From the NCBI GenBank assembly GCA_001643675.2, contig LSRY02000008.1:1798001-1862000 (forward strand): a stretch of 64,000 nt of DNA. The letters run 5' to 3'. Below the pieces are notes generated by a model that searched no databases, had not been told where the DNA came from, and worked only from the letters and a program-made list of their open reading frames with translations. Positions 21,107-41,400 of the stretch are shown here, piece after piece (the first letter of the stretch is position 1; the number at the start of each line of letters is the position of its first letter). Source of the DNA: Monocercomonoides exilis PA203. Taxonomy: Eukaryota; Protista; Preaxostyla. The position numbers were made by a program, and so were the translations under genes.

Positions 21107-22795
21107 GTGAGTCAAACTCCATTCCTCTCAACTCCCTCGATGCCATTTGCTTCTCTCTCCAAATTATCATTTTTCAACATCTCAACATCAAATGAGGCAT
21201 ATTCACCTTCTACCACTTCCTCATCCCAAACATCAAGTTTTATGAATAGTTGCTCATTTTCGTCTGTTTGTGACGTATATGATGGCGGAATTGTTCCTTC
21301 TTTGAACAGTCCATTGGCCTCTTTGACTGTCTCAAACACCTCATTCATTGGATGCTGCCGGACAAGGAATGTTGTTTGTGAAGGAACTTCAGATGGAAAG
21401 TTGAATCCAGGGAGGCAAAACATTACTGACAATGGAGCTAATTCATTCACTTGGTGCGAGTGGTACGGATCGACAACAACAGGAACAAACAATGATTATA
21501 CTGATGTGGATTCAAACGGAGGAGCAATCTGTATGTACAATCTGAGAAATGGAGAGCTTTCTGTTTCTCATTGCTCGTTTAATAATTGCGATGCTCACTG
21601 GTGTGGAGGAGGAATCATGTGTCATACAATCAAATCAGTCATTTCGGAAAATAACTTTTTCAATTCGTGCACCGCTCGGTACAGTTATGGAGGAGGATTA
21701 TACTCTTATTCGATCTCGGCATGTGCTCGGATCAGTGGATGCGAATTCCAGAATTGCAAAGCAAACAGTCAAGGCGGAGGTTTGAAACTTGAAAGTTTTC
21801 AGGTTTCAGGAACAGGATGCATTGAAGCAGAAAATGAAGGAGGAGAGAGTGCATGTGTGTTTGACTGCTGCTTCACATCATGCTCTCTTACAAATTCATA
21901 TGGTGGAGGTATGTATTGCTACAATGTTCCTAATCAATTCAAAATGAGGAGCGTTCAGTTTATCTCCTGTACAGCTTTGTCACAAGGTGGGGGAATGAGA
22001 TTGGAGCCAAATCGAGCAACAGGGCCAGTTGATGGGTGCTATTGTTATTTCCTATTTTTTCATGAGTGCAAGTGCTCAGCCAATCCTCCCAGTGGTCATG
22101 ATGTATTTTATGTTGATAAATACGATGTTTTCTTGAATGAGGGGAATCCGTTTTGCGAAAGCTATTCCACCAACAGCGATGATAGAAGAGTGTGCTATGT
22201 GTTTAACTTCTCGAATGCTGGTGTCTGGACATATGACCAAACATCAAAAAAGGATTGGTTGAAAGATAAAACGTTATACGTTTCAATGAATGGAAATGAT
22301 GAATATGAGCTGTGTGGGGCAAATACAACATTTGCATGTACAACAGTGAAGAAGGCGTTTGAGATGTGTGAAATACAGATTAGCTTGACAATCACACTGA
22401 TGGACGGGAATCACACAAGCGAGGCAACAACAATTGAGATTGGAGAAAAGAAGATTTCAGTTATTGGGAAAGGCAAAGATAAAAGTTTGATTGGAACAGG
22501 GGCACTTTCATCGGTAGGAATTCTATTCAGTGTTTCGACAGGACACCTTGGTTTATTGCACATGAAGGTTGATTGCAACTCAACAGCAGATTTTTCTTCG
22601 CCGAGTGTGGTTGTGGTGTCTGATGGGGGTGGGTCACTCTCATTGGAGGATGTTGTGATCACAACGAGTAAAACTGGAGGCTATGTGATGTCTTCGTCAG
22701 TGTTTGTGGTGGTGCTGTCACAACTGTCGATGGTTGGTGTGGAGATCAAAGACACGAATATTACACGGCTGCAGTTTTGTGAAACAGAATTGTGA
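21107..22795 (+). CDS. Cassette E: variable domain plus ~170 aa of the next module
   Basis: 562 aa ORF with the same framework; extends to GHLGLLHMKVDCNS...LSLEDVVIT. Confidence 0.8.
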   Translation: MSQTPFLSTPSMPFASLSKLSFFNISTSNEAYSPSTTSSSQTSSFMNSCSFSSVCDVYDGGIVPSLNSPLASLTVSNTSFIGCCRTRNVVCEGTSDGKLNPGRQNITDNGANSFTWCEWYGSTTTGTNNDYTDVDSNGGAICMYNLRNGELSVSHCSFNNCDAHWCGGGIMCHTIKSVISENNFFNSCTARYSYGGGLYSYSISACARISGCEFQNCKANSQGGGLKLESFQVSGTGCIEAENEGGESACVFDCCFTSCSLTNSYGGGMYCYNVPNQFKMRSVQFISCTALSQGGGMRLEPNRATGPVDGCYCYFLFFHECKCSANPPSGHDVFYVDKYDVFLNEGNPFCESYSTNSDDRRVCYVFNFSNAGVWTYDQTSKKDWLKDKTLYVSMNGNDEYELCGANTTFACTTVKKAFEMCEIQISLTITLMDGNHTSEATTIEIGEKKISVIGKGKDKSLIGTGALSSVGILFSVSTGHLGLLHMKVDCNSTADFSSPSVVVVSDGGGSLSLEDVVITTSKTGGYVMSSSVFVVVLSQLSMVGVEIKDTNITRLQFCETEL

Positions 22796-23850
22796 GGATT
22801 GTGGGGAAGAGAAAGTGTTCCGTGGGGTGAGAGAGGGAATGAAAAGAAAAGATAAAGCGAACAATGAAAGCTGAGTCACACGAAATGGAGAGTGTTTTGA
22901 GATGAATATTCTGGGGAGAGATTTATTGAAGTGGCTGAAAAGGTTCTTTGAGATGACGAAATATATTTTGCTATTTTTAATTTTCGAGAGGAGAGTGGAA
23001 GTTGCTTTGAGATTTTGTATCAGAAGATTTTTGGTTTTGTCAATTCTTTACAAATGGTCAGGAAAACAAAAAAAATTTTTTTATCAAAAGGATTTTTGAT
23101 TTTTCATTGAATCAAAAAGCATTTGGAAAAGATCCACAATAATCATTGTTTTGGGGCTTTAAGTGCGTTTTAATGATTTTTCGATTTTTCATTCATTAAT
23201 TTTTTAATTTTTAATAAAATGAGTGAGCTGTGAGATTTGCCTTTTTGGAATGCAATCAATAAACAGTAATTATCAGAAAACGTGCAAATTGATGAAAGCG
23301 ATGGAGAAAAGAGAAAAATTGTCAAAACTCAAGAAACGCGAAAAAAACGAGTTTTGTCATTCAAAGAAATAAATCGTTGTCAAAAACACTTCGGTTCTTA
23401 AAAAAAGACAATTATTATTAATACACTGATTTAGCAATTCTCTGTGAAATAATTATTAAGTGGATGTATTTCTTTTTTTTTAATCATTTCTTTTCTCTGA
23501 GCGTGGATCACATCTTTTATCTTTTCTTTCTGAGTGTGACAATAATATATGACAAATGAAAGATAATATAAATGTGTGTGCGTTATCCTTTTTGAAAAGT
23601 CGCAAATGTTTAATATCAGGGTTATATAAAATTTTGACCTTTTTGATAATTTTTGGTGATAAATCCATCAGACTTTATCACTTTGCAAATTAGAATAAAA
23701 CAATCGATATGAAGCGAGAATATGTGAATTGTGGAAAATCTTGATTGATTTTTTTGCAAAAATTGATCAAACAAGGAACATTCTCATTTGTCCTGGATAT
23801 TTAACATATGCAATTTTTCAAAAAGAATAACTCATATATATATATATATA

Positions 23851-24111
23851 TATGGGTGATTATTATTGAAATCATATTATTTCATACAAAAATTTCGAAT
23901 CGAAAATAAAACTTCAATATCAACAAAAGAACGCTGAAGAGTGAAAAGGCCTATAAAAAACAACAACATCTTTATTTGAACAAAAAGATTTATTTATTAA
24001 ACAATTGTGAAAAATTCACAAATTGCAGACAAAATCTCTTCCCAGTGACAAACAACCTTTAAAAAATGAACACCCCGAAAAAAGTTATAATTTCAAAAAT
24101 AATATCCCATA
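23851..24111. mobile_element. ~260 bp MITE (mirror copy 40454-40713)
   Basis: TATGGGTGATTATTATTGAAATCATA ... TATAATTTCAAAAATAATATCCCATA, next to a (TA)n run. Confidence 0.75.
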
Positions 24112-25310
24112 TAATCACATTTGGTTTTGATATGTGTTCAATTTTCAAAGAAAAATCGATTTTTTGATCCAAAATTTTTAAAAATTCGAATTTTCAGAAA
24201 TGCGATAAAAAAATAAGTCTGAATAACATAATAAAAAAATTATTTTTAATGCAATAAAACGAGTTATTGTGAAGAATTTCCTTAAATGAAAAAATAAACC
24301 CAATTTTTTTTTAATTAATAATATATTTACTATTTTTTTCTGTGTTAAGTCACATCGCAAATAATCACAATTGGAAAGTCACAAAAAGTTGAGCAAAAGC
24401 CGACGTGATAATATCTGATTTTGACCGTCAAATATTTTCATCGCTTTCTGACACTCATCCAAAAGCAATTTTTCACAAAAAATTTTTTGTTCAAAAATAC
24501 TCAAATGATAATTTTCGAATAATAAGTTTTTCAATTTTGAATAATAAATGATGAAACCAGTTTTGAGTGTTTTTGAATAAATGAAAATTATAGAAACATA
24601 GTCAGAACATGCGCATGATTCTTTTAGATGATGATGTGTGTAAACATGATGAATCATTGAAAACAAAAAGTCGTTAAAATGATTTTCCTGATTTTCATTC
24701 AATAAAACATATTTGGCTTTTCAAAATTCATTCCAACAATTTTTTTGTTCTGTTGATAAAACATGAGTTTTCCATCAAATATCTTTTTTTTTTAAAGAAA
24801 GACTCTTATTCTTTCCACTTGATTTATTTTTATTATAATTTTTATTTATTATTATTTTTTTGAGAGAATCTTTTTGGAAGAGATTTTATGGATGAGGCGG
24901 CGGTTAGTGTAGCGATTGAGGTGGAGAAAGATGGAGAGGGCGAGTGAAGGAAGAGACAGAGAGATGGCGGACGTGAGAGATGGAAAGAGAAGGAGAAAGA
25001 AGAAGTAGATAGAAGAGTTTGAGGGAAACAAGAACCCAACTGCGAGATATGATCAGCAAGAGATAGAGAAACGAATGAGAAGAGAATTCCGATTGGACAA
25101 ATGTTTTGTGTGACATTGTGGTGAAAATGGTGATGGATTTCAGCAAAGGTTATATCATTGAAATTGCTTCCTTCTTCTTCCTTCTTCTTCCCTCTTCATT
25201 TTTTCTATTGAATAATTTGCTTCACAAAATAAGCACAAAAAATTCTCTTTCACAGCCGTCTTCTGCTGCTTCACTGAACATTCCGTCTTTCTTCATGAAT
25301 AACTAATACC

Positions 25311-25412
25311 ATCGTCGTCGTCGTCGTCGTCGTCATCATCATCATCATCATCATTATCATCATCATCTTCTTCTTCTTCTTCTTCTTCTTCTTCTTCTTC
25401 TTCTTCTTCTTC
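25311..25412. repeat. Compound trinucleotide microsatellite (TCG)n(TCA)n(TCT)n; mirror at ~39156-39254
   Basis: Seen directly; block lengths differ between the two arms. Confidence 0.9.
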
Positions 25413-26156
25413 AGCTTATATTGCGTACTTGGCATATCTCAATGCCCCCCAGCTGCAAATTTATCAAGCAATGCGAAGGGAAAAAATGATGATAATTCTG
25501 CGGTTCCTTATTAGGAACAGGAAAACATAGAAATGAAGTTTTTGTTTGTTTAATCCCCACCGGAAAATCACGTTCATGCCTTCACAACTACTGTTGACAT
25601 TCAAGCAAATTAATTCTTCTTCTTCTTCCTCTTCTTCTTCTTTTACAGCAAGCACAAAATGTTTCATTATCCAAAGGAATTCAATGAGCTAAATTTCAAA
25701 GCAAAGGAAATGAAAGAGTATTTTTGTTTGATAATGCTTTGTGAGGAGAAGGCGGGAAAAATGAGGCACATTGATGATTTTCGATGGGCTGAGGAAGAGA
25801 TTGCAGGATTTTGAATTTGGAGAAGGGAAACAGAAATGGAACAAAGATGAAGATTGGAGGGAGAGCAATGAGAAGAAGGGATAAGAGAAAGGGGGAATAA
25901 TGAGGAAGTGGGAAAGGAAGAAAGAGAAGGGAAATTAATGAGAAAGATTCAAAAATATTGGAAAGTTCAAAGAAGACTGTGGCGATACGCTTTGAGGTTG
26001 CAATCAAAAGGATGATCTTTGGAGAAGCGAATTGGAACAAGGAATTATCTCAGCCTTTTTGATTTTTGTCAGATATGACGAAAGAGATGGAGGCGAGGGA
26101 TATAAAGATGCCTCGGCAAAAAAAGGCGAGATTGAAGGATAACAAAGGAATAACTA

Positions 26157-26213
<57 letters not shown>

Positions 26214-26802
26214 ATTTTATTTTATTTTATTTTATTTTATTTTTTGTGTGTGTGTGTATGCATGCGCGTGCGTGCGCAAGTAATTTTTTATTGTTATTTC
26301 CTTTTCGGTTGTGCTTAGCAAAAACGTTTTTATGGCTGCCTTCCAAAAATGACGAGGGAACATACACTTTGGAAGATTGACAGAAGATGGAAACTGAATG
26401 GCCATCAACAGCACAGCTGGATCGATAACTCTATGGGAGAATTTTTGTTATGCATTTTTGAAGAGAAAAGGAGCTTTTATTCATTTTCTACGAGATTTCT
26501 TTTATTAACAGTCGAAAAGGAAGGAAAAGGGATATAGGCTAATTATGATATTTGTAAAATTGCACAAAAAGTCGAGGCAGGCTATTGGGAAGGAAATAGG
26601 GAAATAGGGCCAATGAGCAAAGGAAAAAGAATCATTTCTGAAAGTTAATAACACGCATCCTCTTTTTGCGTGTCTTCTGCCCCATTCCTCTCAGGTCCCT
26701 AAATTTCCCTTATGTGCCTTCCCAAGCTTCCTTTTTTCCACATTTCTGCAAAATCAACAACATCAACAATTTTAATCAATTTCTTGTGAAACCTCTTATC
26801 TG

Positions 26803-28014
26803 ATGAGCAGTTGTTCATTTTCGTCTGTTTGTGATGTGTTTGATGGAGGAATTGTTCCATCCCTCAACAACCCCTTGGCTTCCTTAATTGTTTCAAACAC
26901 TTCATTCATTGGGTGTTGCAGAACAAGAAATGTTGAATGCACTGGAACTACAGATGGAAAGTTGACTCCAGACAGACAGAACGAAACATTCAATGGAGCT
27001 AATTCATTCACTTGGTGTGAATGGAGTGGATCAAATACAACAGGAATAAATAATGATTATGCAGATGTGGCTTCAAATGGAGGGGCCATCTGTATGTATG
27101 GTCAATCAAACGCCTCTGTCTCAATTAAATACTGTTCTTTCAACGACTGTTATGCTTATTGGGATGGAGGAGGAGTCATGTGTGCAAACATAAAATCGGT
27201 TGAAATTGAAAGCAACTATTTCAATTCATGTTCAGCTCAAGTGAATGTTGGGGGAGCCATGTGCGTTGTGACAATTTCATCGTGTGTTCGGATTAGCGAG
27301 TGTGAATTCCAGAATTGTAAAGCGGCTTATAATGGAGGAGGGCTTTTTCTTAGCAGTTTTAATGTTTCAGGAACAGGCTGCATCGAGGAAGAAAATGGGG
27401 AAGGGGAGAGTGCGTGTGTGTATGACTGCAGTTTTTCTTCATGCTCACTTACAAGCACAAGTGGCGGAGGTATGTTTTGTCAATATGTTCCTGCTGCATT
27501 TAAAATGAGGAGCATTCAGTTTATATCATGTAATGCATCGGCATATGGAGGAGGATTTTGGTTTCATCCTGCTCAATCAACAGCGCCAAGTGATGGATTT
27601 TATTGTTATTTTTTGTTCTTCCATGAATGCAAATGCAGAACAACCTCCACTCCATATGGGCATGATGTGATGTATTATGATCGCTATGAACTTTTTAACT
27701 CTTCAGGGAATCCATTTCATGAATGTTACACAACTAATACAGATGGCAGGAGAGTATGTTACGGATATAATAATACGGGAAGTAGCTGGCTATTTAAACA
27801 CACAGAAAAGAAGGATTGGTTGAAAGATAAAACGTTATATGTTTCTGTGAATGGAAATGATGAATATGAGCTGTGTGGGGCAAATGAAGCATTTCCTTGT
27901 CTGACAGTGAAGAAGGCACTTGAGATGTGTGAGGTTCAGATTAGCTTGACAATAACGCTGATGGACGGGAATCATCAAAGTGAGACAACAACTATTGAGA
28001 TTGGGACAAGATGA
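26803..28014 (+). CDS. Cassette F
   Basis: 403 aa ORF. Upstream homology (SSFCVSSAPFL, from ~26655) is out of frame and contains a stop; downstream homology (ISIIGKGRE) continues after a frameshift. Confidence 0.8.
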   Translation: MSSCSFSSVCDVFDGGIVPSLNNPLASLIVSNTSFIGCCRTRNVECTGTTDGKLTPDRQNETFNGANSFTWCEWSGSNTTGINNDYADVASNGGAICMYGQSNASVSIKYCSFNDCYAYWDGGGVMCANIKSVEIESNYFNSCSAQVNVGGAMCVVTISSCVRISECEFQNCKAAYNGGGLFLSSFNVSGTGCIEEENGEGESACVYDCSFSSCSLTSTSGGGMFCQYVPAAFKMRSIQFISCNASAYGGGFWFHPAQSTAPSDGFYCYFLFFHECKCRTTSTPYGHDVMYYDRYELFNSSGNPFHECYTTNTDGRRVCYGYNNTGSSWLFKHTEKKDWLKDKTLYVSVNGNDEYELCGANEAFPCLTVKKALEMCEVQISLTITLMDGNHQSETTTIEIGTR

Positions 28015-29348
28015 TTTCGATCATTGGGAAGGGAAGGGAAATAAATGTGATTAGCACAGAAGTTAATATGAAATGTTCATCTTTCTTAATTTTCCTTATC
28101 TTTTTTTTATTATTATTAATCTTTTTTTCTATTCCCTCATCTTCTTCCTCTTCTTTCTCATTTTCATCTTTTTGCATATCAAATTCTTTTTATTCTACCA
28201 TCTCTTCTCCCTCTTCCTCTTCTCCCTCTTCCTCGTTACTATCTTTTTTGTCTCTCTTTTTAGAATGTGATTGTCAAAATTATTTAATAGGAAACGGAAC
28301 ATGAGATTGAGTATTGCCATATGTTTATTTTGGAGCAGAATGGAAGGGAAGACGGGGAAGATGGGTGCATTGGGAGAACGGGGAAGCATTTGGAGAGAAG
28401 AAGTGAAAGAAAAAGTCAGCAAAGAGGAAACATAAAAAACATGCATTAATTTATTGTTTATAAATAATATTCCAATTTTTCATCTTTTATCAATTTTTGT
28501 TTCTTTAAGGTTATTGTGTAAGAAATGTTGAATGGCTATGAATGAACATGGAATGTGGAAAGAGAGGTTATTTGATGCATATAAAGATCAGGAGATAATA
28601 ACTGCAAGGCGCATAGAAGAATGAGCGAGAGGAAATAAATGAAAGGAAAGGAAAAGATAATTTTTTTTTGAAGGCATTGGAAGGCATTTACGACGAATCT
28701 TGTTAAAAGCAAAAAGATGTAACAGAAGCTGATGATAAAACAGAAGAAAATATTTGGTTAAAAGTTGAGAAGAAGAAGAAGAAGGGATTGGTGAATCAGA
28801 AGATTGCGAAAGGAAAATGGTACAGGCTTTTTCATATTTTATGAAATATTTTTTGATAATTTTCTTCAATGTTTTATTTCATGTTTAACATTTTGTTGTT
28901 TGATTATTTAATCAAATTATTTCATATTCTCCATTAAGTTTATATCAAAATAGTTCTTAAGCTTATTCTCTATGCGAATGTACTTATGGAATATGGAAAG
29001 AAAGCAGAAGATGGAAACAGGAAAAAAAGAGATAATGTGGAAGAGGGATAACGAGGGATGTTGGAATACTGTTTCGATTGGGCGATGTTGAAGAGAAAAG
29101 TTTTCTAATTTTCACAAAATATTTATCAGAAGTATCAAAAGAGAAATAGGAAGAGGACTTCAAGCCCATTGAAGTCTTGGCGAATATTTCATTGAAACAC
29201 ATGGCAGATTTATGCAAATGAGTGAAGGAAAAAGGAGTATTTCGGTGAGAGAGTCGCACTTCTCATCTACTTCCTCATTCTTCTCATTACCCTCACACCC
29301 CTAATTTTCTTCTCTCACCTGACATTTTTCAACACATCAACAGCAAAT

Positions 29349-30781
29349 GTGGCATGTTCACCTGCAACCACAATGTCAACCCAAGTATCATGTTTTATGG
29401 TCAGCTGCTCATTTTCGTCTGTTTGTGATGTGTATGATGGCGGAATTGTCCCTTCTCTGAACAACCCCTATGCCTCTCTGATAGCCTCAAACACCTCATT
29501 CATTGGATGCTGCCGGACAAGGAATGTTGTTTGTGAAGGAACTGCAGATAATAAGAAACAACTGGGAAGACAGAATGAAACAGAAAATGGAGCGAATACA
29601 TTTGTTTGGTGTGAATGGAATGGATCGAGGACAACAGGAGAAAGTGAGTCTGTTACAGATGGAGTATCAAGCGGAGGAGCAATTTGCATGTTCAGTCAGT
29701 CATCCGCCTCTGTTTCCGTTTCTCACTGCACTTTCAACGACTGCTATGCGTATTATGATGGAGGAGCTATCATGTGCTATAATATAAAATCTGTGAAAAT
29801 TGAAAACAACTATTTCAATTCATGTTCAGCTCAAGTGAATGTTGGGGGAGCCATGTGCATCGTCACGATTTCATCGTGTGTTCGGATCAGCGGATGTGAA
29901 TTTCAGAATTGTAAAGCAAATAGTCAAGGGGGAGGGTTTTATCTTGATCGTTTTCAGGTTTCAGAAACAGGATGTATTGAAGCAGAAAATGGAGAAGGGG
30001 AGAGTGCGTGTGTGTTTGACTGCAGTTTTTCTTCATGCTCAGTTGCAAATAATTATGGCGGAGGCATGTATTGCACTAACATTCCTGTTGCATTCAAGAT
30101 CAAGAATATTAGATTTCTTTTTGCTATGCTGTTTCATATGGCGGAGGGTTGCGATTATATACAGATAAAGCAACGATGCCTAAAGCTTTGCATTATTGTT
30201 ATTTCCTTTTCTTCCATGAATGCAAATGTTCAGCCAATCCACCATATGGGCATGACGTTGCATATGCAGATTATAACAGTCTTTATCTGGATTCAGGGAA
30301 TCCGTTCAAAGAATGCTACACCACAAACACAGAGGAGAAGAGAGTGTGCTATGCCTACAATTATACTGGGAACAGCTGGTCCTTTCAACACACCGAAAAA
30401 AAGGATTGGCTGAAAGACAAGACGATTTATGTGTCAGTGAATGGGAATGACAATTTAGAGTCATGTGGAGTAAATGAAGCAAATCCGTGCAAAACGGTGA
30501 AGAAGGCGTTTGAGATGTGTGAAATACAGATAAGCTTGTCAGTCACGCTGATGGAAGGAAATCACGTAAGCAAGACAGCAACAATTGAGATTGGAGAAAA
30601 GAAGATCTCAGTCATTGGGAAGGGAAGGGAAGCAAGTTCGATTGGAACAGGAACGCTTTCATTTCCATCCGCAGCTAAATCGCTGTTCAGCGTGTCAACA
30701 GGTCGTCTGGGAATGCATAAGTTGAAGATTGATTGTAACTCACATACAAGTCCTCTTTCACACATTCTTGAACTCTGTTAA
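29349..30781 (+). pseudogene. Cassette G (1-nt frameshift at T-run 30118-30122)
   Basis: Two ORFs (29349-30413 and 30149-30781) together equal the intact mirror copy G'; T5 here versus T6 in G'. Confidence 0.8.
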
Positions 30782-31586
30782 TGAGGTGTGCTTTAGAGAT
30801 GCTTGTGAAAAAGCAGGAAATATCTATAAGTTTTTGCCTAAGCTATCTTTTCACATAGAATTGCTTTCAAAAATGTTGTGAGTACAAAGGCATTTATTGT
30901 TCATTAAAAACTATCTTGTAATAGTTTTTTAATGAACAATGGATTTTTTTTCACATTAAAATCAATCTTTACAATTAATAATAGAGCAACATTTTTAAAG
31001 ACTTTGTACACTATTTTTGAATTACGTACACAAAAAATAATTCGGTTTCGAAATAGTGATTAAAAGGGCATAAAGCTACTTTAAGGGTAACTGAAAAATT
31101 AAAAACAAGCTTTATGAAAAGGCTAAATGTTTTCGAGTGAACTTTCATCAACACTCTTTGGTGTTGGCTATACGTTTTATTTATCATTTTTCTTTTTTAG
31201 GGTTTTCGTTCTCAAAAACAACTGTCCCCTAATTGAAATTTTTAAATAATTTTTTTTTTGATAAATTCATTAAATAACAATAAAAAGACATTTTCAGGTT
31301 TTTAAATTTGAATATTATTGCTATTTGCAATTGTTTGGGTTGAAAATAACTCAATTTAAGTATTTTAATGAAGTTTGAAAAAAGCCTCGTAAAACTTGAG
31401 ATTTGAATAAAAAATCACTCAGTCATTTTTTGCTTTGATCAATTGGTTATTATTTCCCTAATGTATTAATAATATCTTTACATTGTATTTTTTTAGCTAT
31501 TTATTCATGGATTTAACGAAAAAATCTGGTACCCTTAAAGGAGCATCTTTCCATTAAAAGTCGAATCTAATATTTTTTAAACAAAT

Positions 31587-31846
31587 ATTGGGGATTATTT
31601 TTGAAATCATATTTTTTTCGGAGTATGGATGATAAAATGTATTTTTTATCACTGACATGGATAATTCATGTTAAAATGTTCTATCAATTGCAATAATCAC
31701 AAAAATGTGTGTTTTTAATGAATGAAATGAAACGAACTCTTTTAATGGTGCGATTCTTTTATGGGTTAATCTTCCAGTTTTAATAAATAAGTTTTCAAAA
31801 CAATTTTTGTGACAAAAATTTTTGACTTCAATTATAATCACTCATA
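31587..31846. mobile_element. ~260 bp MITE, degenerate (mirror 32722-32981)
   Basis: ATTGGGGATTATTTTTGAAATCATA ... TTGACTTCAATTATAATCACTCATA. Confidence 0.65.
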
Positions 31847-33785
31847 TCTTAAATATATTTTAAAATAATGCATTTAAATATTATTTAAAAATGATAGAAT
31901 GAAAGGAATCATGGGCAAAAATCAAATGTTGATGATATTCAAAAAATTGAATTCGAAGGTTGCATCGAGAAGAATATCTGTACCTGTGATGCTTGCAACA
32001 GAATTGACGTTTCATCGTTTGAGAATAATTTTTAAATGAAAAATTTTCTCATTTTTCAATTGTGTTTTTCTTTTTGAGAAAATAGCACACATATTCCAAC
32101 AGTTTGGATCCGTTTTTTCTTTCTCAAGTCAATGCTTTCGATATATCTAATTAACATGTGTAATTCTTTTTGAAAAGTTTATTATGTTTCACTTTCACTT
32201 TAAATGAAATAAAGTATTTTTAATGAAATTTTGACTGTCTACCTGTTTAATATGATTGGAATGATAATCATGTCATATCTGAAAATATTCGTTGAAATAA
32301 ATCGTGTGAAAGAAAATTTTAACATCCAGGTAGAAACAACATAAGGATAATATATGAATTTCATTTAAAGTGAAAGTGAAACATTTTAAACTTTTCAAAA
32401 AGAATTACACATGTTAATTAGATATATCGAAAGCATTGACTTGAGAAAGAAAAAACGGATCCAAACTGTTGGAATATGTGTGCTATTTTCTCAAAAAGAA
32501 AAACACAATTGAAAAATGAGAAAATTTTTCATTTAAAAATTATTCTCAAACGATGAAACGTCAATTCTGTTGCAAGCATCACAGGTACAGATATTCTTCT
32601 CGATGCAACCTTCGAATTCAATTTTTTGAATATCATCAACATTTGATTTTTGCCCATGATTCCTTTCATTCTATCATTTTTAAATAATATTTAAATGCAT
32701 TATTTTAAAATATATTTAAGATATGAGTGATTATAATTGAAGTCAAAAATTTTTGTCACAAAAATTGTTTTGAAAACTTATTTATTAAAACTGGAAGATT
32801 AACCCATAAAAGAATCGCACCATTAAAAGAGTTCGTTTCATTTCATTCATTAAAAACACACATTTTTGTGATTATTGCAATTGATAGAACATTTTAACAT
32901 GAATTATCCATGTCAGTGATAAAAAATACATTTTATCATCCATACTCCGAAAAAAATATGATTTCAAAAATAATCCCCAATATTTGTTTAAAAAATATTA
33001 GATTCGACTTTTAATGGAAAGATGCTCCTTTAAGGGTACCAGATTTTTTCGTTAAATCCATGAATAAATAGCTAAAAAAATACAATGTAAAGATATTATT
33101 AATACATTAGGGAAATAATAACCAATTGATCAAAGCAAAAAATGACTGAGTGATTTTTTATTCAAATCTCAAGTTTTACGAGGCTTTTTTCAAACTTCAT
33201 TAAAATACTTAAATTGAGTTATTTTCAACCCAAACAATTGCAAATAGCAATAATATTCAAATTTAAAAACCTGAAAATGTCTTTTTATTGTTATTTAATG
33301 AATTTATCAAAAAAAAAATTATTTAAAAATTTCAATTAGGGGACAGTTGTTTTTGAGAACGAAAACCCTAAAAAAGAAAAATGATAAATAAAACGTATAG
33401 CCAACACCAAAGAGTGTTGATGAAAGTTCACTCGAAAACATTTAGCCTTTTCATAAAGCTTGTTTTTAATTTTTCAGTTACCCTTAAAGTAGCTTTATGC
33501 CCTTTTAATCACTATTTCGAAACCGAATTATTTTTGTGTACGTAATTCAAAAATAGTGTACAAAGTCTTTAAAAATGTTGCTCTATTATTAATTGTAAAG
33601 ATTGATTTTAATGTGAAAAAAAATCCATTGTTCATTAAAAAACTATTACAAGATAGTTTTTAATGAACAATAAATGCCTTTGTACTCACAACATTTTTGA
33701 AAGCAATTCTATGTGAAAAGATAGCTTAGGCAAAAACTTATAGATATTTCCTGCTTTTTCACAAGCATCTCTAAAGCACACCTCA

Positions 33786-35219
33786 TTAACAGAGTTCAAG
33801 AATGTGTGAAAGAGGACTTGTATGTGAGTTACAATCAATCTTCAACTTATGCATTCCCAGACGACCTGTTGACACGCTGAACAGCGATTTAGCTGCGGAT
33901 GGAAATGAAAGCGTTCCTGTTCCAATCGAACTTGCTTCCCTTCCCTTCCCAATGACTGAGATCTTCTTTTCTCCAATCTCAATTGTTGCTGTCTTGCTTA
34001 CGTGATTTCCTTCCATCAGCGTGACTGACAAGCTTATCTGTATTTCACACATCTCAAACGCCTTCTTCACCGTTTTGCACGGATTTGCTTCATTTACTCC
34101 ACATGACTCTAAATTGTCATTCCCATTCACTGACACATAAATCGTCTTGTCTTTCAGCCAATCCTTTTTTTCGGTGTGTTGAAAGGACCAGCTGTTCCCA
34201 GTATAATTGTAGGCATAGCACACTCTCTTCTCCTCTGTGTTTGTGGTGTAGCATTCTTTGAACGGATTCCCTGAATCCAGATAAAGACTGTTATAATCTG
34301 CATATGCAACGTCATGCCCATATGGTGGATTGGCTGAACATTTGCATTCATGGAAGAAAAGGAAATAACAATAATGCAAAGCTTTAGGCATCGTTGCTTT
34401 ATCTGTATATAATCGCAACCCTCCGCCATATGAAACAGCATAGCAAAAAAGAAATCTAATATTCTTGATCTTGAATGCAACAGGAATGTTAGTGCAATAC
34501 ATGCCTCCGCCATAATTATTTGCAACTGAGCATGAAGAAAAACTGCAGTCAAACACACACGCACTCTCCCCTTCTCCATTTTCTGCTTCAATACATCCTG
34601 TTTCTGAAACCTGAAAACGATCAAGATAAAACCCTCCCCCTTGACTATTTGCTTTACAATTCTGAAATTCACATCCGCTGATCCGAACACACGATGAAAT
34701 CGTGACGATGCACATGGCTCCCCCAACATTCACTTGAGCTGAACATGAATTGAAATAGTTGTTTTCAATTTTCACAGATTTTATATTATAGCACATGATA
34801 GCTCCTCCATCATAATACGCATAGCAGTCGTTGAAAGTGCAGTGAGAAACGGAAACAGAGGCGGATGACTGACTGAACATGCAAATTGCTCCTCCGCTTG
34901 ATACTCCATCTGTAACAGACTCACTTTCTCCTGTTGTCCTCGATCCATTCCATTCACACCAAACAAATGTATTCGCTCCATTTTCTGTTTCATTCTGTCT
35001 TCCCAGTTGTTTCTTATTATCTGCAGTTCCTTCACAAACAACATTCCTTGTCCGGCAGCATCCAATGAATGAGGTGTTTGAGGCTATCAGAGAGGCATAG
35101 GGGTTGTTCAGAGAAGGGACAATTCCGCCATCATACACATCACAAACAGACGAAAATGAGCAGCTGACCATAAAACATGATACTTGGGTTGACATTGTGG
35201 TTGCAGGTGAACATGCCAC
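33786..35219 (-). CDS. Cassette G' (intact mirror of G)
   Basis: 477 aa ORF with the family framework. Confidence 0.8.
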   Translation of the reverse strand: MACSPATTMSTQVSCFMVSCSFSSVCDVYDGGIVPSLNNPYASLIASNTSFIGCCRTRNVVCEGTADNKKQLGRQNETENGANTFVWCEWNGSRTTGESESVTDGVSSGGAICMFSQSSASVSVSHCTFNDCYAYYDGGAIMCYNIKSVKIENNYFNSCSAQVNVGGAMCIVTISSCVRISGCEFQNCKANSQGGGFYLDRFQVSETGCIEAENGEGESACVFDCSFSSCSVANNYGGGMYCTNIPVAFKIKNIRFLFCYAVSYGGGLRLYTDKATMPKALHYCYFLFFHECKCSANPPYGHDVAYADYNSLYLDSGNPFKECYTTNTEEKRVCYAYNYTGNSWSFQHTEKKDWLKDKTIYVSVNGNDNLESCGVNEANPCKTVKKAFEMCEIQISLSVTLMEGNHVSKTATIEIGEKKISVIGKGREASSIGTGTLSFPSAAKSLFSVSTGRLGMHKLKIDCNSHTSPLSHILELC

Positions 35220-36553
35220 ATTTGCTGTTGATGTGTTGAAAAATGTCAGGTGAGAGAAGAAAATTAGGGGTGTGAGGGTAATGAGAAGAATGAGGAAGTA
35301 GATGAGAAGTGCGACTCTCTCACCGAAATACTCCTTTTTCCTTCACTCATTTGCATAAATCTGCCATGTGTTTCAATGAAATATTCGCCAAGACTTCAAT
35401 GGGCTTGAAGTCCTCTTCCTATTTCTCTTTTGATACTTCTGATAAATATTTTGTGAAAATTAGAAAACTTTTCTCTTCAACATCGCCCAATCGAAACAGT
35501 ATTCCAACATCCCTCGTTATCCCTCTTCCACATTATCTCTTTTTTTCCTGTTTCCATCTTCTGCTTTCTTTCCATATTCCATAAGTACATTCGCATAGAG
35601 AATAAGCTTAAGAACTATTTTGATATAAACTTAATGGAGAATATGAAATAATTTGATTAAATAATCAAACAACAAAATGTTAAACATGAAATAAAACATT
35701 GAAGAAAATTATCAAAAAATATTTCATAAAATATGAAAAAGCCTGTACCATTTTCCTTTCGCAATCTTCTGATTCACCAATCCCTTCTTCTTCTTCTTCT
35801 CAACTTTTAACCAAATATTTTCTTCTGTTTTATCATCAGCTTCTGTTACATCTTTTGCTTTTAACAAGATTCGTCGTAAATGCCTTCCAATGCCTTCAAA
35901 AAAAAATTATCTTTTCCTTTCCTTTCATTTATTTCCTCTCGCTCATTCTTCTATGCGCCTTGCAGTTATTATCTCCTGATCTTTATATGCATCAAATAAC
36001 CTCTCTTTCCACATTCCATGTTCATTCATAGCCATTCAACATTTCTTACACAATAACCTTAAAGAAACAAAAATTGATAAAAGATGAAAAATTGGAATAT
36101 TATTTATAAACAATAAATTAATGCATGTTTTTTATGTTTCCTCTTTGCTGACTTTTTCTTTCACTTCTTCTCTCCAAATGCTTCCCCGTTCTCCCAATGC
36201 ACCCATCTTCCCCGTCTTCCCTTCCATTCTGCTCCAAAATAAACATATGGCAATACTCAATCTCATGTTCCGTTTCCTATTAAATAATTTTGACAATCAC
36301 ATTCTAAAAAGAGAGACAAAAAAAGATAGTAACGAGGAAGAGGGAGAAGAGGAAGAGGGAGAAGAGATGGTAGAATAAAAAGAATTTGATATGCAAAAAG
36401 ATGAAAATGAGAAAGAAGAGGAAGAAGATGAGGGAATAGAAAAAAAGATTAATAATAATAAAAAAAAGATAAGGAAAATTAAGAAAGATGAACATTTCAT
36501 ATTAACTTCTGTGCTAATCACATTTATTTCCCTTCCCTTCCCAATGATCGAAA

Positions 36554-37765
36554 TCATCTTGTCCCAATCTCAATAGTTGTTGTCTCACTTTGATGATTCC
36601 CGTCCATCAGCGTTATTGTCAAGCTAATCTGAACCTCACACATCTCAAGTGCCTTCTTCACTGTCAGACAAGGAAATGCTTCATTTGCCCCACACAGCTC
36701 ATATTCATCATTTCCATTCACAGAAACATATAACGTTTTATCTTTCAACCAATCCTTCTTTTCTGTGTGTTTAAATAGCCAGCTACTTCCCGTATTATTA
36801 TATCCGTAACATACTCTCCTGCCATCTGTATTAGTTGTGTAACATTCATGAAATGGATTCCCTGAAGAGTTAAAAAGTTCATAGCGATCATAATACATCA
36901 CATCATGCCCATATGGAGTGGAGGTTGTTCTGCATTTGCATTCATGGAAGAACAAAAAATAACAATAAAATCCATCACTTGGCGCTGTTGATTGAGCAGG
37001 ATGAAACCAAAATCCTCCTCCATATGCCGATGCATTACATGATATAAACTGAATGCTCCTCATTTTAAATGCAGCAGGAACATATTGACAAAACATACCT
37101 CCGCCACTTGTGCTTGTAAGTGAGCATGAAGAAAAACTGCAGTCATACACACACGCACTCTCCCCTTCCCCATTTTCTTCCTCGATGCAGCCTGTTCCTG
37201 AAACATTAAAACTGCTAAGAAAAAGCCCTCCTCCATTATAAGCCGCTTTACAATTCTGGAATTCACACTCGCTAATCCGAACACACGATGAAATTGTCAC
37301 AACGCACATGGCTCCCCCAACATTCACTTGAGCTGAACATGAATTGAAATAGTTGCTTTCAATTTCAACCGATTTTATGTTTGCACACATGACTCCCCCT
37401 CCATCAAAGAAAGCATAACAGTCGTTGAAAGAACAGTATTTAATTGAGACAGAGGCGTTTGATTGACCATACATACAGATGGCCCCTCCATTTGAAGCCA
37501 CATCTGCATAATCATTATTTATTCCTGTTGTATTTGATCCACTCCATTCACACCAAGTGAATGAATTAGCTCCATTGAATGTTTCGTTCTGTCTGTCTGG
37601 AGTCAACTTTCCATCTGTAGTTCCAGTGCATTCAACATTTCTTGTTCTGCAACACCCAATGAATGAAGTGTTTGAAACAATTAAGGAAGCCAAGGGGTTG
37701 TTGAGGGATGGAACAATTCCTCCATCAAACACATCACAAACAGACGAAAATGAACAACTGCTCAT
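36554..37765 (-). CDS. Cassette F' (mirror of F; YW to FF change in a variable loop)
   Basis: 403 aa ORF identical to F except CYAFFDGGG versus CYAYWDGGG. Confidence 0.8.
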   Translation of the reverse strand: MSSCSFSSVCDVFDGGIVPSLNNPLASLIVSNTSFIGCCRTRNVECTGTTDGKLTPDRQNETFNGANSFTWCEWSGSNTTGINNDYADVASNGGAICMYGQSNASVSIKYCSFNDCYAFFDGGGVMCANIKSVEIESNYFNSCSAQVNVGGAMCVVTISSCVRISECEFQNCKAAYNGGGLFLSSFNVSGTGCIEEENGEGESACVYDCSFSSCSLTSTSGGGMFCQYVPAAFKMRSIQFISCNASAYGGGFWFHPAQSTAPSDGFYCYFLFFHECKCRTTSTPYGHDVMYYDRYELFNSSGNPFHECYTTNTDGRRVCYGYNNTGSSWLFKHTEKKDWLKDKTLYVSVNGNDEYELCGANEAFPCLTVKKALEMCEVQISLTITLMDGNHQSETTTIEIGTR

Positions 37766-38354
37766 CAGATAAGAGGTTTCACAAGAAATTGATTAAAATT
37801 GTTGATGTTGTTGATTTTGCAGAAATGTGGAAAAAAGGAAGCTTGGGAAGGCACATAAGGGAAATTTAGGGACCTGAGAGGAATGGGGCAGAAGACACGC
37901 AAAAAGAGGATGCGTGTTATTAACTTTCAGAAATGATTCTTTTTCCTTTGCTCATTGGCCCTATTTCCCTATTTCCTTCCCAATAGCCTGCCTCGACTTT
38001 TTGTGCAATTTTACAAATATCATAATTAGCCTATATCCCTTTTCCTTCCTTTTCGACTGTTAATAAAAGAAATCTCGTAGAAAATGAATAAAAGCTCCTT
38101 TTCTCTTCAAAAATGCATAACAAAAATTCTCCCATAGAGTTATCGATCCAGCTGTGCTGTTGATGGCCATTCAGTTTCCATCTTCTGTCAATCTTCCAAA
38201 GTGTATGTTCCCTCGTCATTTTTGGAAGGCAGCCATAAAAACGTTTTTGCTAAGCACAACCGAAAAGGAAATAACAATAAAAAATTACTTGCGCACGCAC
38301 GCGCATGCATACACACACACACAAAAAATAAAATAAAATAAAATAAAATAAAAT

Positions 38355-38411
<57 letters not shown>

Positions 38412-41400
38412 TAGTTATTCCTTTGTTATCCTTCAATCTCGCCTTTTTTTGCCGAGGCATCTTTATATCCCTCGCCTCCATCTCTTTCGTCATATCTGAC
38501 AAAAATCAAAAAGGCTGAGATAATTCCTTGTTCCAATTCGCTTCTCCAAAGATCATCCTTTTGATTGCAACCTCAAAGCGTATCGCCACAGTCTTCTTTG
38601 AACTTTCCAATATTTTTGAATCTTTCTCATTAATTTCCCTTCTCTTTCTTCCTTTCCCACTTCCTCATTATTCCCCCTTTCTCTTATCCCTTCTTCTCAT
38701 TGCTCTCCCTCCAATCTTCATCTTTGTTCCATTTCTGTTTCCCTTCTCCAAATTCAAAATCCTGCAATCTCTTCCTCAGCCCATCGAAAATCATCAATGT
38801 GCCTCATTTTTCCCGCCTTCTCCTCACAAAGCATTATCAAACAAAAATACTCTTTCATTTCCTTTGCTTTGAAATTTAGCTCATTGAATTCCTTTGGATA
38901 ATGAAACATTTTGTGCTTGCTGTAAAAGAAGAAGAAGAGGAAGAAGAAGAAGAATTAATTTGCTTGAATGTCAACAGTAGTTGTGAAGGCATGAACGTGA
39001 TTTTCCGGTGGGGATTAAACAAACAAAAACTTCATTTCTATGTTTTCCTGTTCCTAATAAGGAACCGCAGAATTATCATCATTTTTTCCCTTCGCATTGC
39101 TTGATAAATTTGCAGCTGGGGGGCATTGAGATATGCCAAGTACGCAATATAAGCTGAAGAAGAAGAAGAAGAAGAAGAAGAAGAAGATGATGATGATGAT
39201 GATGATGATAATGATGATGATGATGATGATGACGACGACGACGACGACGACGATGGTATTAGTTATTCATGAAGAAAGACGGAATGTTCAGTGAAGCAGC
39301 AGAAGACGGCTGTGAAAGAGAATTTTTTGTGCTTATTTTGTGAAGCAAATTATTCAATAGAAAAAATGAAGAGGGAAGAAGAAGGAAGAAGAAGGAAGCA
39401 ATTTCAATGATATAACCTTTGCTGAAATCCATCACCATTTTCACCACAATGTCACACAAAACATTTGTCCAATCGGAATTCTCTTCTCATTCGTTTCTCT
39501 ATCTCTTGCTGATCATATCTCGCAGTTGGGTTCTTGTTTCCCTCAAACTCTTCTATCTACTTCTTCTTTCTCCTTCTCTTTCCATCTCTCACGTCCGCCA
39601 TCTCTCTGTCTCTTCCTTCACTCGCCCTCTCCATCTTTCTCCACCTCAATCGCTACACTAACCGCCGCCTCATCCATAAAATCTCTTCCAAAAAGATTCT
39701 CTCAAAAAAATAATAATAAATAAAAATTATAATAAAAATAAATCAAGTGGAAAGAATAAGAGTCTTTCTTTAAAAAAAAAAGATATTTGATGGAAAACTC
39801 ATGTTTTATCAACAGAACAAAAAAATTGTTGGAATGAATTTTGAAAAGCCAAATATGTTTTATTGAATGAAAATCAGGAAAATCATTTTAACGACTTTTT
39901 GTTTTCAATGATTCATCATGTTTACACACATCATCATCTAAAAGAATCATGCGCATGTTCTGACTATGTTTCTATAATTTTCATTTATTCAAAAACACTC
40001 AAAACTGGTTTCATCATTTATTATTCAAAATTGAAAAACTTATTATTCGAAAATTATCATTTGAGTATTTTTGAACAAAAAATTTTTTGTGAAAAATTGC
40101 TTTTGGATGAGTGTCAGAAAGCGATGAAAATATTTGACGGTCAAAATCAGATATTATCACGTCGGCTTTTGCTCAACTTTTTGTGACTTTCCAATTGTGA
40201 TTATTTGCGATGTGACTTAACACAGAAAAAAATAGTAAATATATTATTAATTAAAAAAAAATTGGGTTTATTTTTTCATTTAAGGAAATTCTTCACAATA
40301 ACTCGTTTTATTGCATTAAAAATAATTTTTTTATTATGTTATTCAGACTTATTTTTTTATCGCATTTCTGAAAATTCGAATTTTTAAAAATTTTGGATCA
40401 AAAAATCGATTTTTCTTTGAAAATTGAACACATATCAAAACCAAATGTGATTATATGGGATATTATTTTTGAAATTATAACTTTTTCGGGGTGTTCATTT
40501 TTTAAAGGTTGTTTGTCACTGGGAAGAGATTTTGTCTGCAATTTGTGAATTTTTCACAATTGTTTAATAAATAAATCTTTTTGTTCAAATAAAGATGTTG
40601 TTGTTTTTTATAGGCCTTTTCACTCTTCAGCGTTCTTTTGTTGATATTGAAGTTTTATTTTCGATTCGAAATTTTTGTATGAAATAATATGATTTCAATA
40701 ATAATCACCCATATATATATATATATATATGAGTTATTCTTTTTGAAAAATTGCATATGTTAAATATCCAGGACAAATGAGAATGTTCCTTGTTTGATCA
40801 ATTTTTGCAAAAAAATCAATCAAGATTTTCCACAATTCACATATTCTCGCTTCATATCGATTGTTTTATTCTAATTTGCAAAGTGATAAAGTCTGATGGA
40901 TTTATCACCAAAAATTATCAAAAAGGTCAAAATTTTATATAACCCTGATATTAAACATTTGCGACTTTTCAAAAAGGATAACGCACACACATTTATATTA
41001 TCTTTCATTTGTCATATATTATTGTCACACTCAGAAAGAAAAGATAAAAGATGTGATCCACGCTCAGAGAAAAGAAATGATTAAAAAAAAAGAAATACAT
41101 CCACTTAATAATTATTTCACAGAGAATTGCTAAATCAGTGTATTAATAATAATTGTCTTTTTTTAAGAACCGAAGTGTTTTTGACAACGATTTATTTCTT
41201 TGAATGACAAAACTCGTTTTTTTCGCGTTTCTTGAGTTTTGACAATTTTTCTCTTTTCTCCATCGCTTTCATCAATTTGCACGTTTTCTGATAATTACTG
41301 TTTATTGATTGCATTCCAAAAAGGCAAATCTCACAGCTCACTCATTTTATTAAAAATTAAAAAATTAATGAATGAAAAATCGAAAAATCATTAAAACGCA

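What the first reader, a model, noticed from the sequence alone, without database searches (positions are those of the whole stretch)
27157..27171. Clustered 5-substitution patch in a variable loop between otherwise near-identical palindrome arms
Left arm GCT TAT TGG GAT GGA GGA (A Y W D G G) versus right arm (37397-37410, minus) GCT TTC TTT GAT GGA GGG (A F F D G G): five substitutions within 14 bp, one silent. Elsewhere I found the arms differ mainly by homopolymer/microsatellite indels and two bases near the centre. This is what a very recent templated micro-conversion landing on a hypervariable loop would leave. I did not find the donor in this window.
Basis: partly seen in the sequence, partly recalled or inferred. 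Interest (0 to 1): 0.88.

Follow-up and report, generated by a model that had tools for sequence, protein, structure and literature searches.

The report
Gene-conversion patch in receptor-cassette palindrome
Two mirror-image copies of a surface-receptor "head" gene in the gut protist Monocercomonoides exilis are identical except for a five-base patch that matches a relative on another contig, a footprint of short DNA copying between gene-family members (a known process in an undescribed gene family).

Summary
Over about 9.8 kb the two palindrome arms differ only by five homopolymer indels, one microsatellite, a TT/AA pair near the centre, and five substitutions at 27158, 27159, 27161, 27162 and 27171 (Y119W120 versus F119F120, plus a silent GGA/GGG).

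Both versions occur in 2016 short-read contigs of the same strain, so the patch is not a polishing artefact.

The genome is the M. exilis PA203 Nanopore assembly. The gene is a head-only cassette of a large, species-specific family of giant beta-solenoid surface receptors.

The right-arm (FF) version has a partner: a cassette pair on contig 71, only 76% identical overall. It matches the right arm exactly for 22 nt across all five sites. After one mismatch it matches both arms for a further 81 nt, the strongest shared tract in the gene (0 of 2000 permutations).

A second palindrome shows a 16-substitution patch whose template is the neighbouring cassette. The palindrome centre is a MITE-like element, which suggests a young fold-back duplication.

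Best reading: a short templated ectopic conversion, most likely contig 71 into the right arm; polarity is not proven. This scan already noted the same cassette and palindrome system on other windows of this genome. It is a new member of a known kind, of moderate interest.

The parts
27157..27171 (+). Patch, left-arm version (TAT TGG ... GGA; Y119 W120, G123)
   Evidence: The 22-mer around it is unique in the genome. The 15-mer occurs elsewhere only at contig 21:68971.
37397..37411 (-). Patch, right-arm version (TTC TTT ... GGG; F119 F120, G123)
   Evidence: The FF 15-mer occurs elsewhere only in the contig 71 pair. The A-F-F-D-G-G-G coding pattern is found in only 3 loci genome-wide.
37394..37415 (-). 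Maximal 22-nt stretch of the right arm that is identical to the contig 71 cassette and spans all five sites (mirror of 27153-27174)
27176..27256 (+). 81-nt block identical between both arms of gene B and both arms of the contig 71 cassette (mirror copy at 37312-37392); proposed homology anchor
   Evidence: longest exact run with any paralogue; 70 consecutive concordant polymorphic sites, 0 of 2000 permutations; the right breakpoint is foreign to the contig 71 lineage.
26803..28014 (+). Cassette B, left copy: 403-aa ORF, head domain of the receptor family
36554..37765 (-). Cassette B, right copy: 403-aa ORF
22417..32210 (+). Left palindrome arm; its outer boundary lies inside cassette A
32358..42147 (-). 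Right palindrome arm
32211..32357 (.). 147-nt asymmetric spacer
32141..32427 (.). MITE-like element at the palindrome centre. Its roughly 70-nt inverted ends are the innermost arm sequence. The TT/AA mismatch at 32182-3/32385-6 lies inside these ends.
   Evidence: the ends match dozens of dispersed loci at 75-90% identity, typically as two inverted hits about 180-200 nt apart.
25366..25380 (.). (CAT)n(CTT)n microsatellite length and composition difference between the arms

Best explanation
The patch is the footprint of a short templated, non-allelic (ectopic) gene-conversion or template-switch event between one copy of head cassette B and a paralogous cassette on contig 71.

Shown: the two palindrome arms are otherwise identical. 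The palindrome is centred on a MITE-like hairpin element. Cassette B and the contig 71 cassette, only 76% alike overall, share an 81-nt block of perfect identity (27176-27256). The right-arm patch is identical to contig 71 over the 22 nt directly next to that block, including the silent site.

Inferred: the palindrome is a very young fold-back duplication, or has been freshly homogenised. The identity block served as the homology anchor for pairing of the right-arm copy with the contig 71 cassette. Repair synthesis or heteroduplex repair then ran about 22 nt beyond the block and copied TTC TTT ... GGG into the right arm, while the left arm keeps the cassette's own TAT TGG ... GGA. Arm-to-arm homogenisation has not yet erased the difference.

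I put about 0.65 on a templated ectopic event with this polarity. The process is general in this family: cassettes are mosaics of 40-80-nt tracts, and other palindromes carry similar one-arm patches.
For: - Cluster: 5 substitutions in 14 nt, against 2 others in 9.8 kb.
- Both haplotypes are present in independent 2016 short-read contigs.
- The FF 15-mer occurs in the genome only in the right arm and the contig 71 pair. All five sites plus flanks match over 22 nt. The chance that untemplated changes would hit the states of that one pre-identified partner is (1/3)^5, about 0.004.
- That same partner holds the longest shared tract of the whole gene, directly adjacent: an 81-nt exact run and 70 concordant polymorphic sites, 0 of 2000 permutations.
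- GGG at 27171 is shared by the closest kin of the contig 71 cassette (L047, L059). TAT and GGA are shared by gene C and the cassette at 49 kb, the local kin of B.
- Analogous case: in palindrome C80:1425k/1440k one arm has 16 substitutions in 61 nt and is 100% identical over 86 nt to the neighbouring cassette pair. The other arm's version is unique, best match 93%.
- Further one-arm patches occur in L002/L003 and L019/L020.
- The MITE-like centre supports arms that started identical.
Against: - One mismatch at 27175 (G in both B arms, A in both contig 71 arms) splits the 22-nt and 81-nt blocks. No single continuous tract explains everything.
- The 81-nt block looks foreign in contig 71, that is, transferred B into contig 71. 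The preferred polarity therefore needs two abutting transfers in opposite directions, or one reciprocal event.
- The four non-synonymous states (TTC TTT) are not found in the kin of either lineage, so an outgroup gives no firm polarity.
- A 17-nt exact candidate donor for the YW version also exists at contig 21:68971.
- Placement of one version per arm rests on the assembly only.
Confidence: 0.65

Rival explanations
1. Reverse polarity. FF was the state of cassette B, which donated a single 104-nt tract (27153-27256) to the contig 71 cassette. The left arm was later overwritten at 27158-27171 by a YW-type paralogue. This is still templated micro-conversion, but the converted arm is the left one.
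For: The right breakpoint of the shared block at 27256/7 is foreign to the contig 71 lineage: B, gene C and the 49-kb cassette continue alike, while contig 71 returns to its own kin. One tract with one later point change is simple. YW is the commonest state in the family (24 versus 5 near-matches). An exact 15-17-nt YW+GGA match exists at contig 21:68971.
Against: The left-arm 22-mer is unique in the genome, and the contig 21 cassette is only 73.5% alike, with no adjacent identity block. TAT and GGA agree with B's local kin. In the analogous palindrome, the version with an exact copy elsewhere is the derived one.
Confidence: 0.15
2. Relic island. The arms were once diverged mirror paralogues and were homogenised by arm-to-arm conversion. 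The 14-22-nt patch is a gap between two tracts, or a patch of unrepaired heteroduplex.
For: The outer boundary of the palindrome lies inside mirror cassettes that are still 82% alike beyond it. So arm-to-arm recombination between older mirror copies has occurred. Five differences in 14-22 nt equals paralogue-level divergence.
Against: It needs two multi-kb tracts ending within 22 nt of each other, with no other relic in 9.8 kb. It does not predict the 5/5 match to contig 71, nor the coincidence of the island's left edge with the left edge of the contig 71 identity (27153). The MITE-like centre points to a fold-back duplication with arms identical from the start. The second palindrome's patch has an exact template, which a relic cannot explain.
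Confidence: 0.07
3. Both versions are real but wrongly placed. They are alleles, sub-clones of the culture, or copies of a collapsed extra repeat that the assembler and polishers (Canu, Nanopolish, Pilon) distributed one per arm.
For: The assembly paper itself states that multi-copy regions are poorly polished (PMC8767320). Five uncorrected homopolymer indels between the arms show that polishing was weak here. Short contigs cannot phase the arms.
Against: All five changes are linked on one contig in an independent 2016 run, and the other version appears in two further runs. A five-site cluster with no other variant in 9.8 kb would still require the same conversion event. Contig 71 reads cannot be the source, because that copy differs at many more sites within the 203-nt contig.
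Confidence: 0.08
4. Untemplated clustered mutation, for example error-prone synthesis during break-induced replication when the palindrome formed. The match to contig 71 would be coincidental or due to later donation.
For: A TT/AA dinucleotide change and a microsatellite change also separate the arms. Break-induced replication is known to be mutagenic (general knowledge).
Against: The 5/5 identity, including the silent site, is with the one paralogue that also holds the adjacent 81-nt block. The TT/AA lies within the MITE-like inverted ends and is more simply an original imperfection of that element.
Confidence: 0.05

Closest known systems
Giardia lamblia vsp genes: identical inverted pairs and inter-vsp recombination (Adam et al. 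2010, PMC2996952)
   Same: Both are metamonad gut protists with a large cysteine-rich surface-protein family. Identical gene copies occur as head-to-head or tail-to-tail inverted pairs with an abrupt outer divergence point. A Sawyer-type test shows recombination among members.
   Different: The proteins are unrelated: there is no Pfam VSP hit and the predicted fold is a beta-solenoid. Arms here are about 10 kb with several cassettes and a roughly 140-nt MITE-like centre, rather than a 2-4 kb spacer. The cassettes are head-only fragments of giant receptors.
Human Y- and X-chromosome ampliconic palindromes kept alike by arm-to-arm gene conversion (e.g. PMC3723533)
   Same: These are large inverted repeats with more than 99.9% arm identity and a short spacer that carry multigene families. 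Rare paralogous sequence variants mark recent events (abstract).
   Different: Here the single variant cluster is imported from, or shared with, a paralogue on another contig rather than arising by point mutation. The centre is a MITE-like hairpin element, which suggests a recent fold-back origin rather than long-term maintenance.
Segmental or micro gene conversion in contingency gene families (mosaic VSG in Trypanosoma brucei, vlsE silent cassettes in Borrelia, pilS/pilE in Neisseria; human micro-conversions such as CYP21A2) - from general knowledge
   Same: Short templated tracts of tens of nucleotides are copied between diverged family members. The archive consists of truncated cassettes that cover only the variable part. 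The resulting genes are mosaics.
   Different: No expression site, no directionality and no switching phenotype are shown here. The exchange seen is cassette to cassette. The organism is a commensal, not a pathogen under documented immune pressure.
MITE-centred fold-back palindrome noted earlier in this genome (scan note s1-463897)
   Same: The inverted ends of a small dispersed element form the pivot of a near-perfect gene-bearing palindrome. I found the same here and a dispersed element at the contig 71 centre.
   Different: That case involved full-length receptor genes. This one holds three head-only cassettes per arm and ends inside a cassette.

Membership tests
Ectopic (non-allelic) short-tract gene conversion footprint | Clustered substitutions in otherwise identical duplicates | tested here: met
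   5 substitutions in 14 nt against 2 others in about 9.8 kb
Ectopic (non-allelic) short-tract gene conversion footprint | One version is identical to a paralogue elsewhere across all variant sites and flanks | tested here: met
   Right arm equals contig 71:55701/71585 over 22 nt, and over 104 nt with 1 mismatch
Ectopic (non-allelic) short-tract gene conversion footprint | Shared tract longer than expected from overall divergence (Sawyer/GENECONV-type test) | tested here: met
   70 consecutive concordant polymorphic sites with the contig 71 cassette, 0 of 2000 permutations; five further significant tracts with other paralogues
Ectopic (non-allelic) short-tract gene conversion footprint | Donor and acceptor polarised by an outgroup | tested here: inconclusive
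   Kin of B share TAT and GGA, and kin of the contig 71 cassette share GGG. TTC TTT is absent from both, and site 27175 shows crossed states
Ectopic (non-allelic) short-tract gene conversion footprint | The two versions lie on the two duplicates of one molecule | not testable with these tools
   Only short Logan contigs were available. This needs Nanopore reads of 11 kb or more.
Fold-back (hairpin-primed) inverted duplication / large palindrome | Near-identical inverted arms with a short asymmetric spacer | tested here: met
   Arms 22417-32210 and 42147-32358; 147-nt spacer
Fold-back (hairpin-primed) inverted duplication / large palindrome | Pre-existing short inverted repeat at the pivot | tested here: met
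   The innermost roughly 70 nt of each arm match a dispersed element that occurs elsewhere as inverted hit pairs about 180-200 nt apart
Palindrome maintained by arm-to-arm gene conversion (Y-chromosome type) | Evidence of repeated arm-to-arm conversion rather than youth | tested here: inconclusive
   The outer boundary lies inside mirror cassettes that are 82% alike beyond it. That fits conversion or a recombinational end of a duplication. There are no population data.
Silent-cassette archive for surface-protein variation (vls/pilS/VSG-like) | Truncated cassettes that cover only the variable part of a longer expressed gene | tested here: met
   11 cassettes in the window align only to aa ~162-607/715 of the 2062-aa member P0123. 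One receptor body lies at 60152-56517.
Silent-cassette archive for surface-protein variation (vls/pilS/VSG-like) | Cassettes kept readable | tested here: met
   Median dN/dS 0.26 against 51 paralogues; 2 of 53 have an in-frame stop
Silent-cassette archive for surface-protein variation (vls/pilS/VSG-like) | Transfer from cassettes into an expressed full-length gene; switching of the expressed variant | not tested
Earlier scan notes claim such patches, but I did not check them.
Right-handed beta-helix (Pfam PF13229) | Significant Pfam match | tested here: not met
   No Pfam family for four cassettes. One homologue carries a precomputed PF13229 hit.
Right-handed beta-helix (Pfam PF13229) | Beta-solenoid fold | tested here: inconclusive
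   The AF2 model has stacked short strands with pLDDT above 90 for aa 70-190. Foldseek PDB hits are all beta-helix proteins, but the best E-value is 0.06.
Giardia VSP family | Sequence homology (Pfam VSP domain) | tested here: not met
   No Pfam hit. The resemblance is in genome organisation only.

The most novel reading that the evidence does not exclude
The patch is one caught-in-the-act event of a standing diversification system. Hundreds of head-only, selection-maintained cassettes of giant beta-solenoid surface receptors are multiplied by fold-back at MITE-like hairpins into palindromes. They are continually reshuffled by 20-100-nt templated patches nucleated at identity blocks. This would form a reservoir of variants for the full-length receptor genes, an antigenic-variation-like archive in a commensal, mitochondrion-free protist.
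Probability: 0.3. Interest if true: 0.75.

Novelty: new member of a known kind. Interest (0 to 1): 0.48.

Why it matters
In a pair of duplicates that is otherwise base-for-base identical, a single event stands out without background noise. The patch shows that tracts as short as about 22 nt are exchanged between cassettes only 76% alike, right next to an 81-nt identity block that may have anchored the pairing.

In the 17 copy pairs compared (16 inverted pairs and one further copy), clustered patches account for more differing bases than isolated point changes: 31 against 4 in the clear cases. Templated exchange, not point mutation, therefore appears to drive diversification of this large, undescribed receptor-head family. 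I found no paper describing gene conversion, palindromes or these cassettes in M. exilis.

The practical consequence is that these loci need long-read phasing, because polishing leaves errors in them.

Tried and rejected
- Pfam on four cassettes and on the full-length member P0123: nothing useful.
- Foldseek against the PDB: no significant match, only weak beta-helix hits.
I did not try to obtain them by another tool. The census therefore rests on the 2-3 kb per arm already held.
- X1 contig showing only G>T at 27162. I first considered it a third allele. It fits the TATTGT-type paralogues (C80:1425164/1439999, contig 12:922820) laid at 95% likeness, so it says nothing about YW versus FF.
- Local templating from the TTCTTT hexamer 20 nt upstream (27137-27142). 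Rejected: only 6 nt are shared, and it cannot explain 27171.
- GC-biased conversion. The two versions have equal G+C, so there is no signal.
- Homology between the centres of this palindrome and the contig 71 palindrome: none. They are independent palindromes.
- Expression: no RNA run was listed, so it was not tested.
- The first MAFFT run timed out and was rerun with fast settings.

Full report
**What is in the sequence.**
The left arm reads GCT TAT TGG GAT GGA GGA at 27154-27171. The mirror position on the right arm, read on the minus strand, reads GCT TTC TTT GAT GGA GGG.

A global alignment of the left arm against the reverse complement of the right arm shows very few differences between about 22420 and 32210:
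- five 1-nt indels, at 24078, 28244, 28711, 30118 and 31032
- a microsatellite difference at 25366-25380
- the five substitutions at 27158, 27159, 27161, 27162 and 27171
- TT/AA at 32182-32183

All five indels lie in A5-6 or T5-6 runs. The one at 30118 breaks cassette C in the left arm only; the right copy is an intact 477-aa ORF. These indels are the kind of Nanopore residue that the assembly paper says survives in multi-copy regions (PMC8767320).

The patch changes Y119W120 to F119F120 and leaves G123 silent. Both 403-aa ORFs are intact. Five of seven substitutions within 14 nt of 9.8 kb is far beyond chance, of order 1e-10 by my arithmetic.

**Is it an artefact?**
The genome has 82,301,135 bases in 101 contigs, and every homologue is a 'MONOS_' protein of Monocercomonoides exilis. 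This fits the PA203 Nanopore assembly, which was built with Canu, Nanopolish and ten rounds of Pilon.

Four public runs of one sample hold the stretch. I laid their Logan contigs on 25900-28400:
- Runs X2 and X4 give a 203-nt contig over 27003-27205 with no difference from the left arm.
- Run X3 gives the same 203-nt contig with exactly the five alternative letters, all linked.

These runs date from 2016 and predate the Nanopore assembly, so both haplotypes are real DNA of the strain. The contig 71 paralogue cannot be the source, because it differs at many more positions in that span. A contig in X1 that shows only G>T at 27162 fits the TATTGT-type paralogues and is irrelevant.

One thing remains untested: whether single molecules carry one version per arm. 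Only short contigs were available.

**What the gene is.**
The 403-aa ORF (26803-28014, mirror 36554-37765) has no Pfam match. It has more than 150 close homologues, all in M. exilis, one of which is annotated with the right-handed beta-helix domain PF13229.

An exhaustive HMMER search also finds members of 1,000-3,500 aa in which this domain sits near the N-terminus. One of them, P0123 (2062 aa), has a transmembrane helix near aa 1784-1811 followed by a charged tail.

A tblastn search with P0123 shows that the window holds eleven copies of aa ~162-607/715 only, and a single receptor body (aa 799-2006) at 60152-56517. The palindrome therefore carries head-only cassettes.

The cassettes are not decaying. 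Median dN/dS against 51 paralogues is 0.26 at dS of about 0.86, and only 2 of 53 have an in-frame stop.

An AF2 model built on 40 family members (pTM 0.74, pLDDT above 90 for aa 70-190) shows stacked short strands. Residues 119-120 lie in a turn before the invariant GGG. Foldseek finds only weak beta-helix hits.

Codons 119 and 120 rank at the 81st and 91st percentile of family entropy, but they are nearly always aromatic: Y/H/F at 119 and W/Y/S/F at 120. They are variable, but 'hypervariable loop' is somewhat too strong.

**The partner.**
- The left-arm 22-mer is unique in the genome. Its 15-mer recurs only at contig 21:68971, in a cassette 73.5% alike with different flanks.
- The right-arm 15-mer recurs only in an inverted cassette pair at contig 71:55701(-)/71585(+).
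- The coding pattern A-F-F-D-G-G-G occurs in just three loci genome-wide.

The contig 71 cassette is only 76% identical to cassette B overall. It nevertheless equals the right arm over 27153-27174, differs at 27175, and then equals both arms over 27176-27256.

That 81-nt run is the longest exact run between B and any of about 50 paralogues. In a Sawyer-type permutation test on polymorphic sites it gives 70 consecutive concordant sites, reached in 0 of 2000 permutations. A geometric approximation puts it at about 1e-9 (my arithmetic).

The same test finds further tracts with other paralogues:
- 27504-27568
- 27213-27264, shared with gene C and the cassette at 49 kb
- 27597-27649
- 27848-27885

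Cassette B is therefore a patchwork.

**Polarity.**
At the right breakpoint (27256/7), B, gene C and the 49-kb cassette continue alike, while contig 71 returns to the sequence of its own kin, L047 and L059. The 81-nt block therefore looks foreign in contig 71, which implies transfer from B into contig 71.

For the patch itself the evidence is mixed:
- TAT and GGA are shared with B's local kin.
- GGG is shared with contig 71's kin.
- TTC TTT is found in neither kin group.
- Site 27175 shows crossed states.

My preferred reading is as follows. The identity block anchored pairing of the right-arm copy with contig 71. About 22 nt beyond the block were then copied into the right arm, which explains all five sites, the silent one included, in a single event.

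The reverse is not excluded: B carried FF and donated 104 nt to contig 71, and the left arm was later patched to YW.

**Generality.**
At least 14 inverted pairs occur among the 40 best family hits. Comparing the 2-3 kb I hold for each copy of 17 copy pairs gave these results:
- Most pairs are identical apart from homopolymer indels.
- Several carry isolated clusters: 16 substitutions in 61 nt (L012/L013), 7 in 48 nt (L002/L003, the contig 71 palindrome itself) and 3 in 16 nt (L019/L020).
- Isolated single substitutions total only 4.

For L012/L013, the L012 version is 100% identical over 86 nt to the neighbouring cassette pair in the same palindrome, at C80:1427603(+)/1437494(-). The L013 version is unique, with a best match of 93%. 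This is a second, unambiguous templated patch in one arm.

**Origin of the palindrome.**
- The innermost roughly 70 nt of each arm, together with the 147-nt spacer, match a dispersed element. Elsewhere that element occurs as two inverted hits about 180-200 nt apart, at dozens of loci. It is MITE-like.
- The TT/AA mismatch lies inside these inverted ends.
- The contig 71 palindrome has arms of at least 9 kb and a 140-nt spacer. It has an unrelated centre, which is also a dispersed element.

This favours a fold-back inverted duplication primed at a hairpin-forming element, so the arms would have started identical.

The outer boundary at about 22417/42147 lies inside mirror cassettes that are 82% alike beyond it. 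That fits an end resolved by recombination between cassettes, or later arm-to-arm conversion.

Either way, a relic-island explanation for the patch is unlikely. It would need two multi-kb tracts ending within 22 nt of each other, and it does not predict the match to contig 71.

**Comparison and novelty.**
The closest described analogue in genome organisation is the set of identical inverted vsp pairs of Giardia, together with recombination among vsp genes (PMC2996952). The closest analogue for arm identity is the human sex-chromosome palindromes (PMC3723533). For mechanism, the closest is segmental or micro-conversion in contingency gene families (general knowledge).

The proteins are unrelated to VSPs. 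I found no paper on conversion, palindromes or these cassettes in M. exilis.

Earlier notes of this scan on other windows of the same genome already describe head-only cassettes, palindromes and patch swapping. My results agree with them independently, but the system is not first seen here.

**Verdict.**
This is a real, recent, templated patch, and its partner has been identified. It is a new member of a known kind of event. Its interest is moderate, mainly as an unusually clean example and as part of an undescribed cassette system.

Noticed in passing
window 4617-13124, 21161-22819, 26788-30646, 33822-43403, 48638-49978; body at 56517-60152 (-): Eleven head-only cassettes (aa ~162-607/715 of a 2062-aa receptor) and only one receptor body in 64 kb. 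The cassettes are under purifying selection (median dN/dS 0.26; 2 of 53 with an in-frame stop).
   Followed up: partly
window 32141-32427: The palindrome centre is a MITE-like dispersed element. Its roughly 70-nt inverted ends recur at dozens of loci as inverted pairs about 180-200 nt apart. The TT/AA arm mismatch at 32182-3 lies inside these ends.
   Followed up: partly
L016:2590-2729 (contig 71:63589-63728): The partner cassette on contig 71 lies in its own palindrome, with arms of at least 9 kb and a 140-nt spacer. The centre is unrelated to this window's centre. It is also a dispersed element, with three 81-83% copies on contig 42.
   Followed up: partly
L012:1748-1808 versus L013 (C80:1425k/1440k): Another palindrome has 16 substitutions in 61 nt in one arm only. 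That arm's version is 100% identical over 86 nt to the neighbouring cassette pair at C80:1427603/1437494. The other arm's version is unique.
   Followed up: yes
L002:2485-2532 versus L003; L019:1777-1792 versus L020: Further isolated clusters (7 substitutions in 48 nt, and 3 in 16 nt) in otherwise identical arms of two contig 71 palindromes, apparently outside coding sequence. Donors were not searched for.
   Followed up: no
window 30118 / 34450: A 1-nt T5/T6 homopolymer difference splits cassette C in the left arm (ORFs 29349-30413 and 30149-30781), while the right copy is an intact 477-aa ORF (33786-35219). This is probably an unpolished Nanopore error.
   Followed up: partly
window 27175 / 37393: A single G (both B arms) versus A (both contig 71 arms) splits the 22-nt and 81-nt identity blocks. 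Kin states are crossed: gene C and the 49-kb cassette have A, while L047 and L059 have G. Unexplained.
   Followed up: partly
window 22246-22416 / 42319-42147: The outer palindrome boundary is a roughly 170-nt mosaic zone inside cassette A. Beyond it the mirror cassettes are only 82% alike (21128-21970 versus 43436-42591).
   Followed up: partly
window 25330-25420 / 39150-39240: The (CAT)n(CTT)n microsatellite differs between the arms in the share of CAT and CTT units. This could be slippage or a read error.
   Followed up: no
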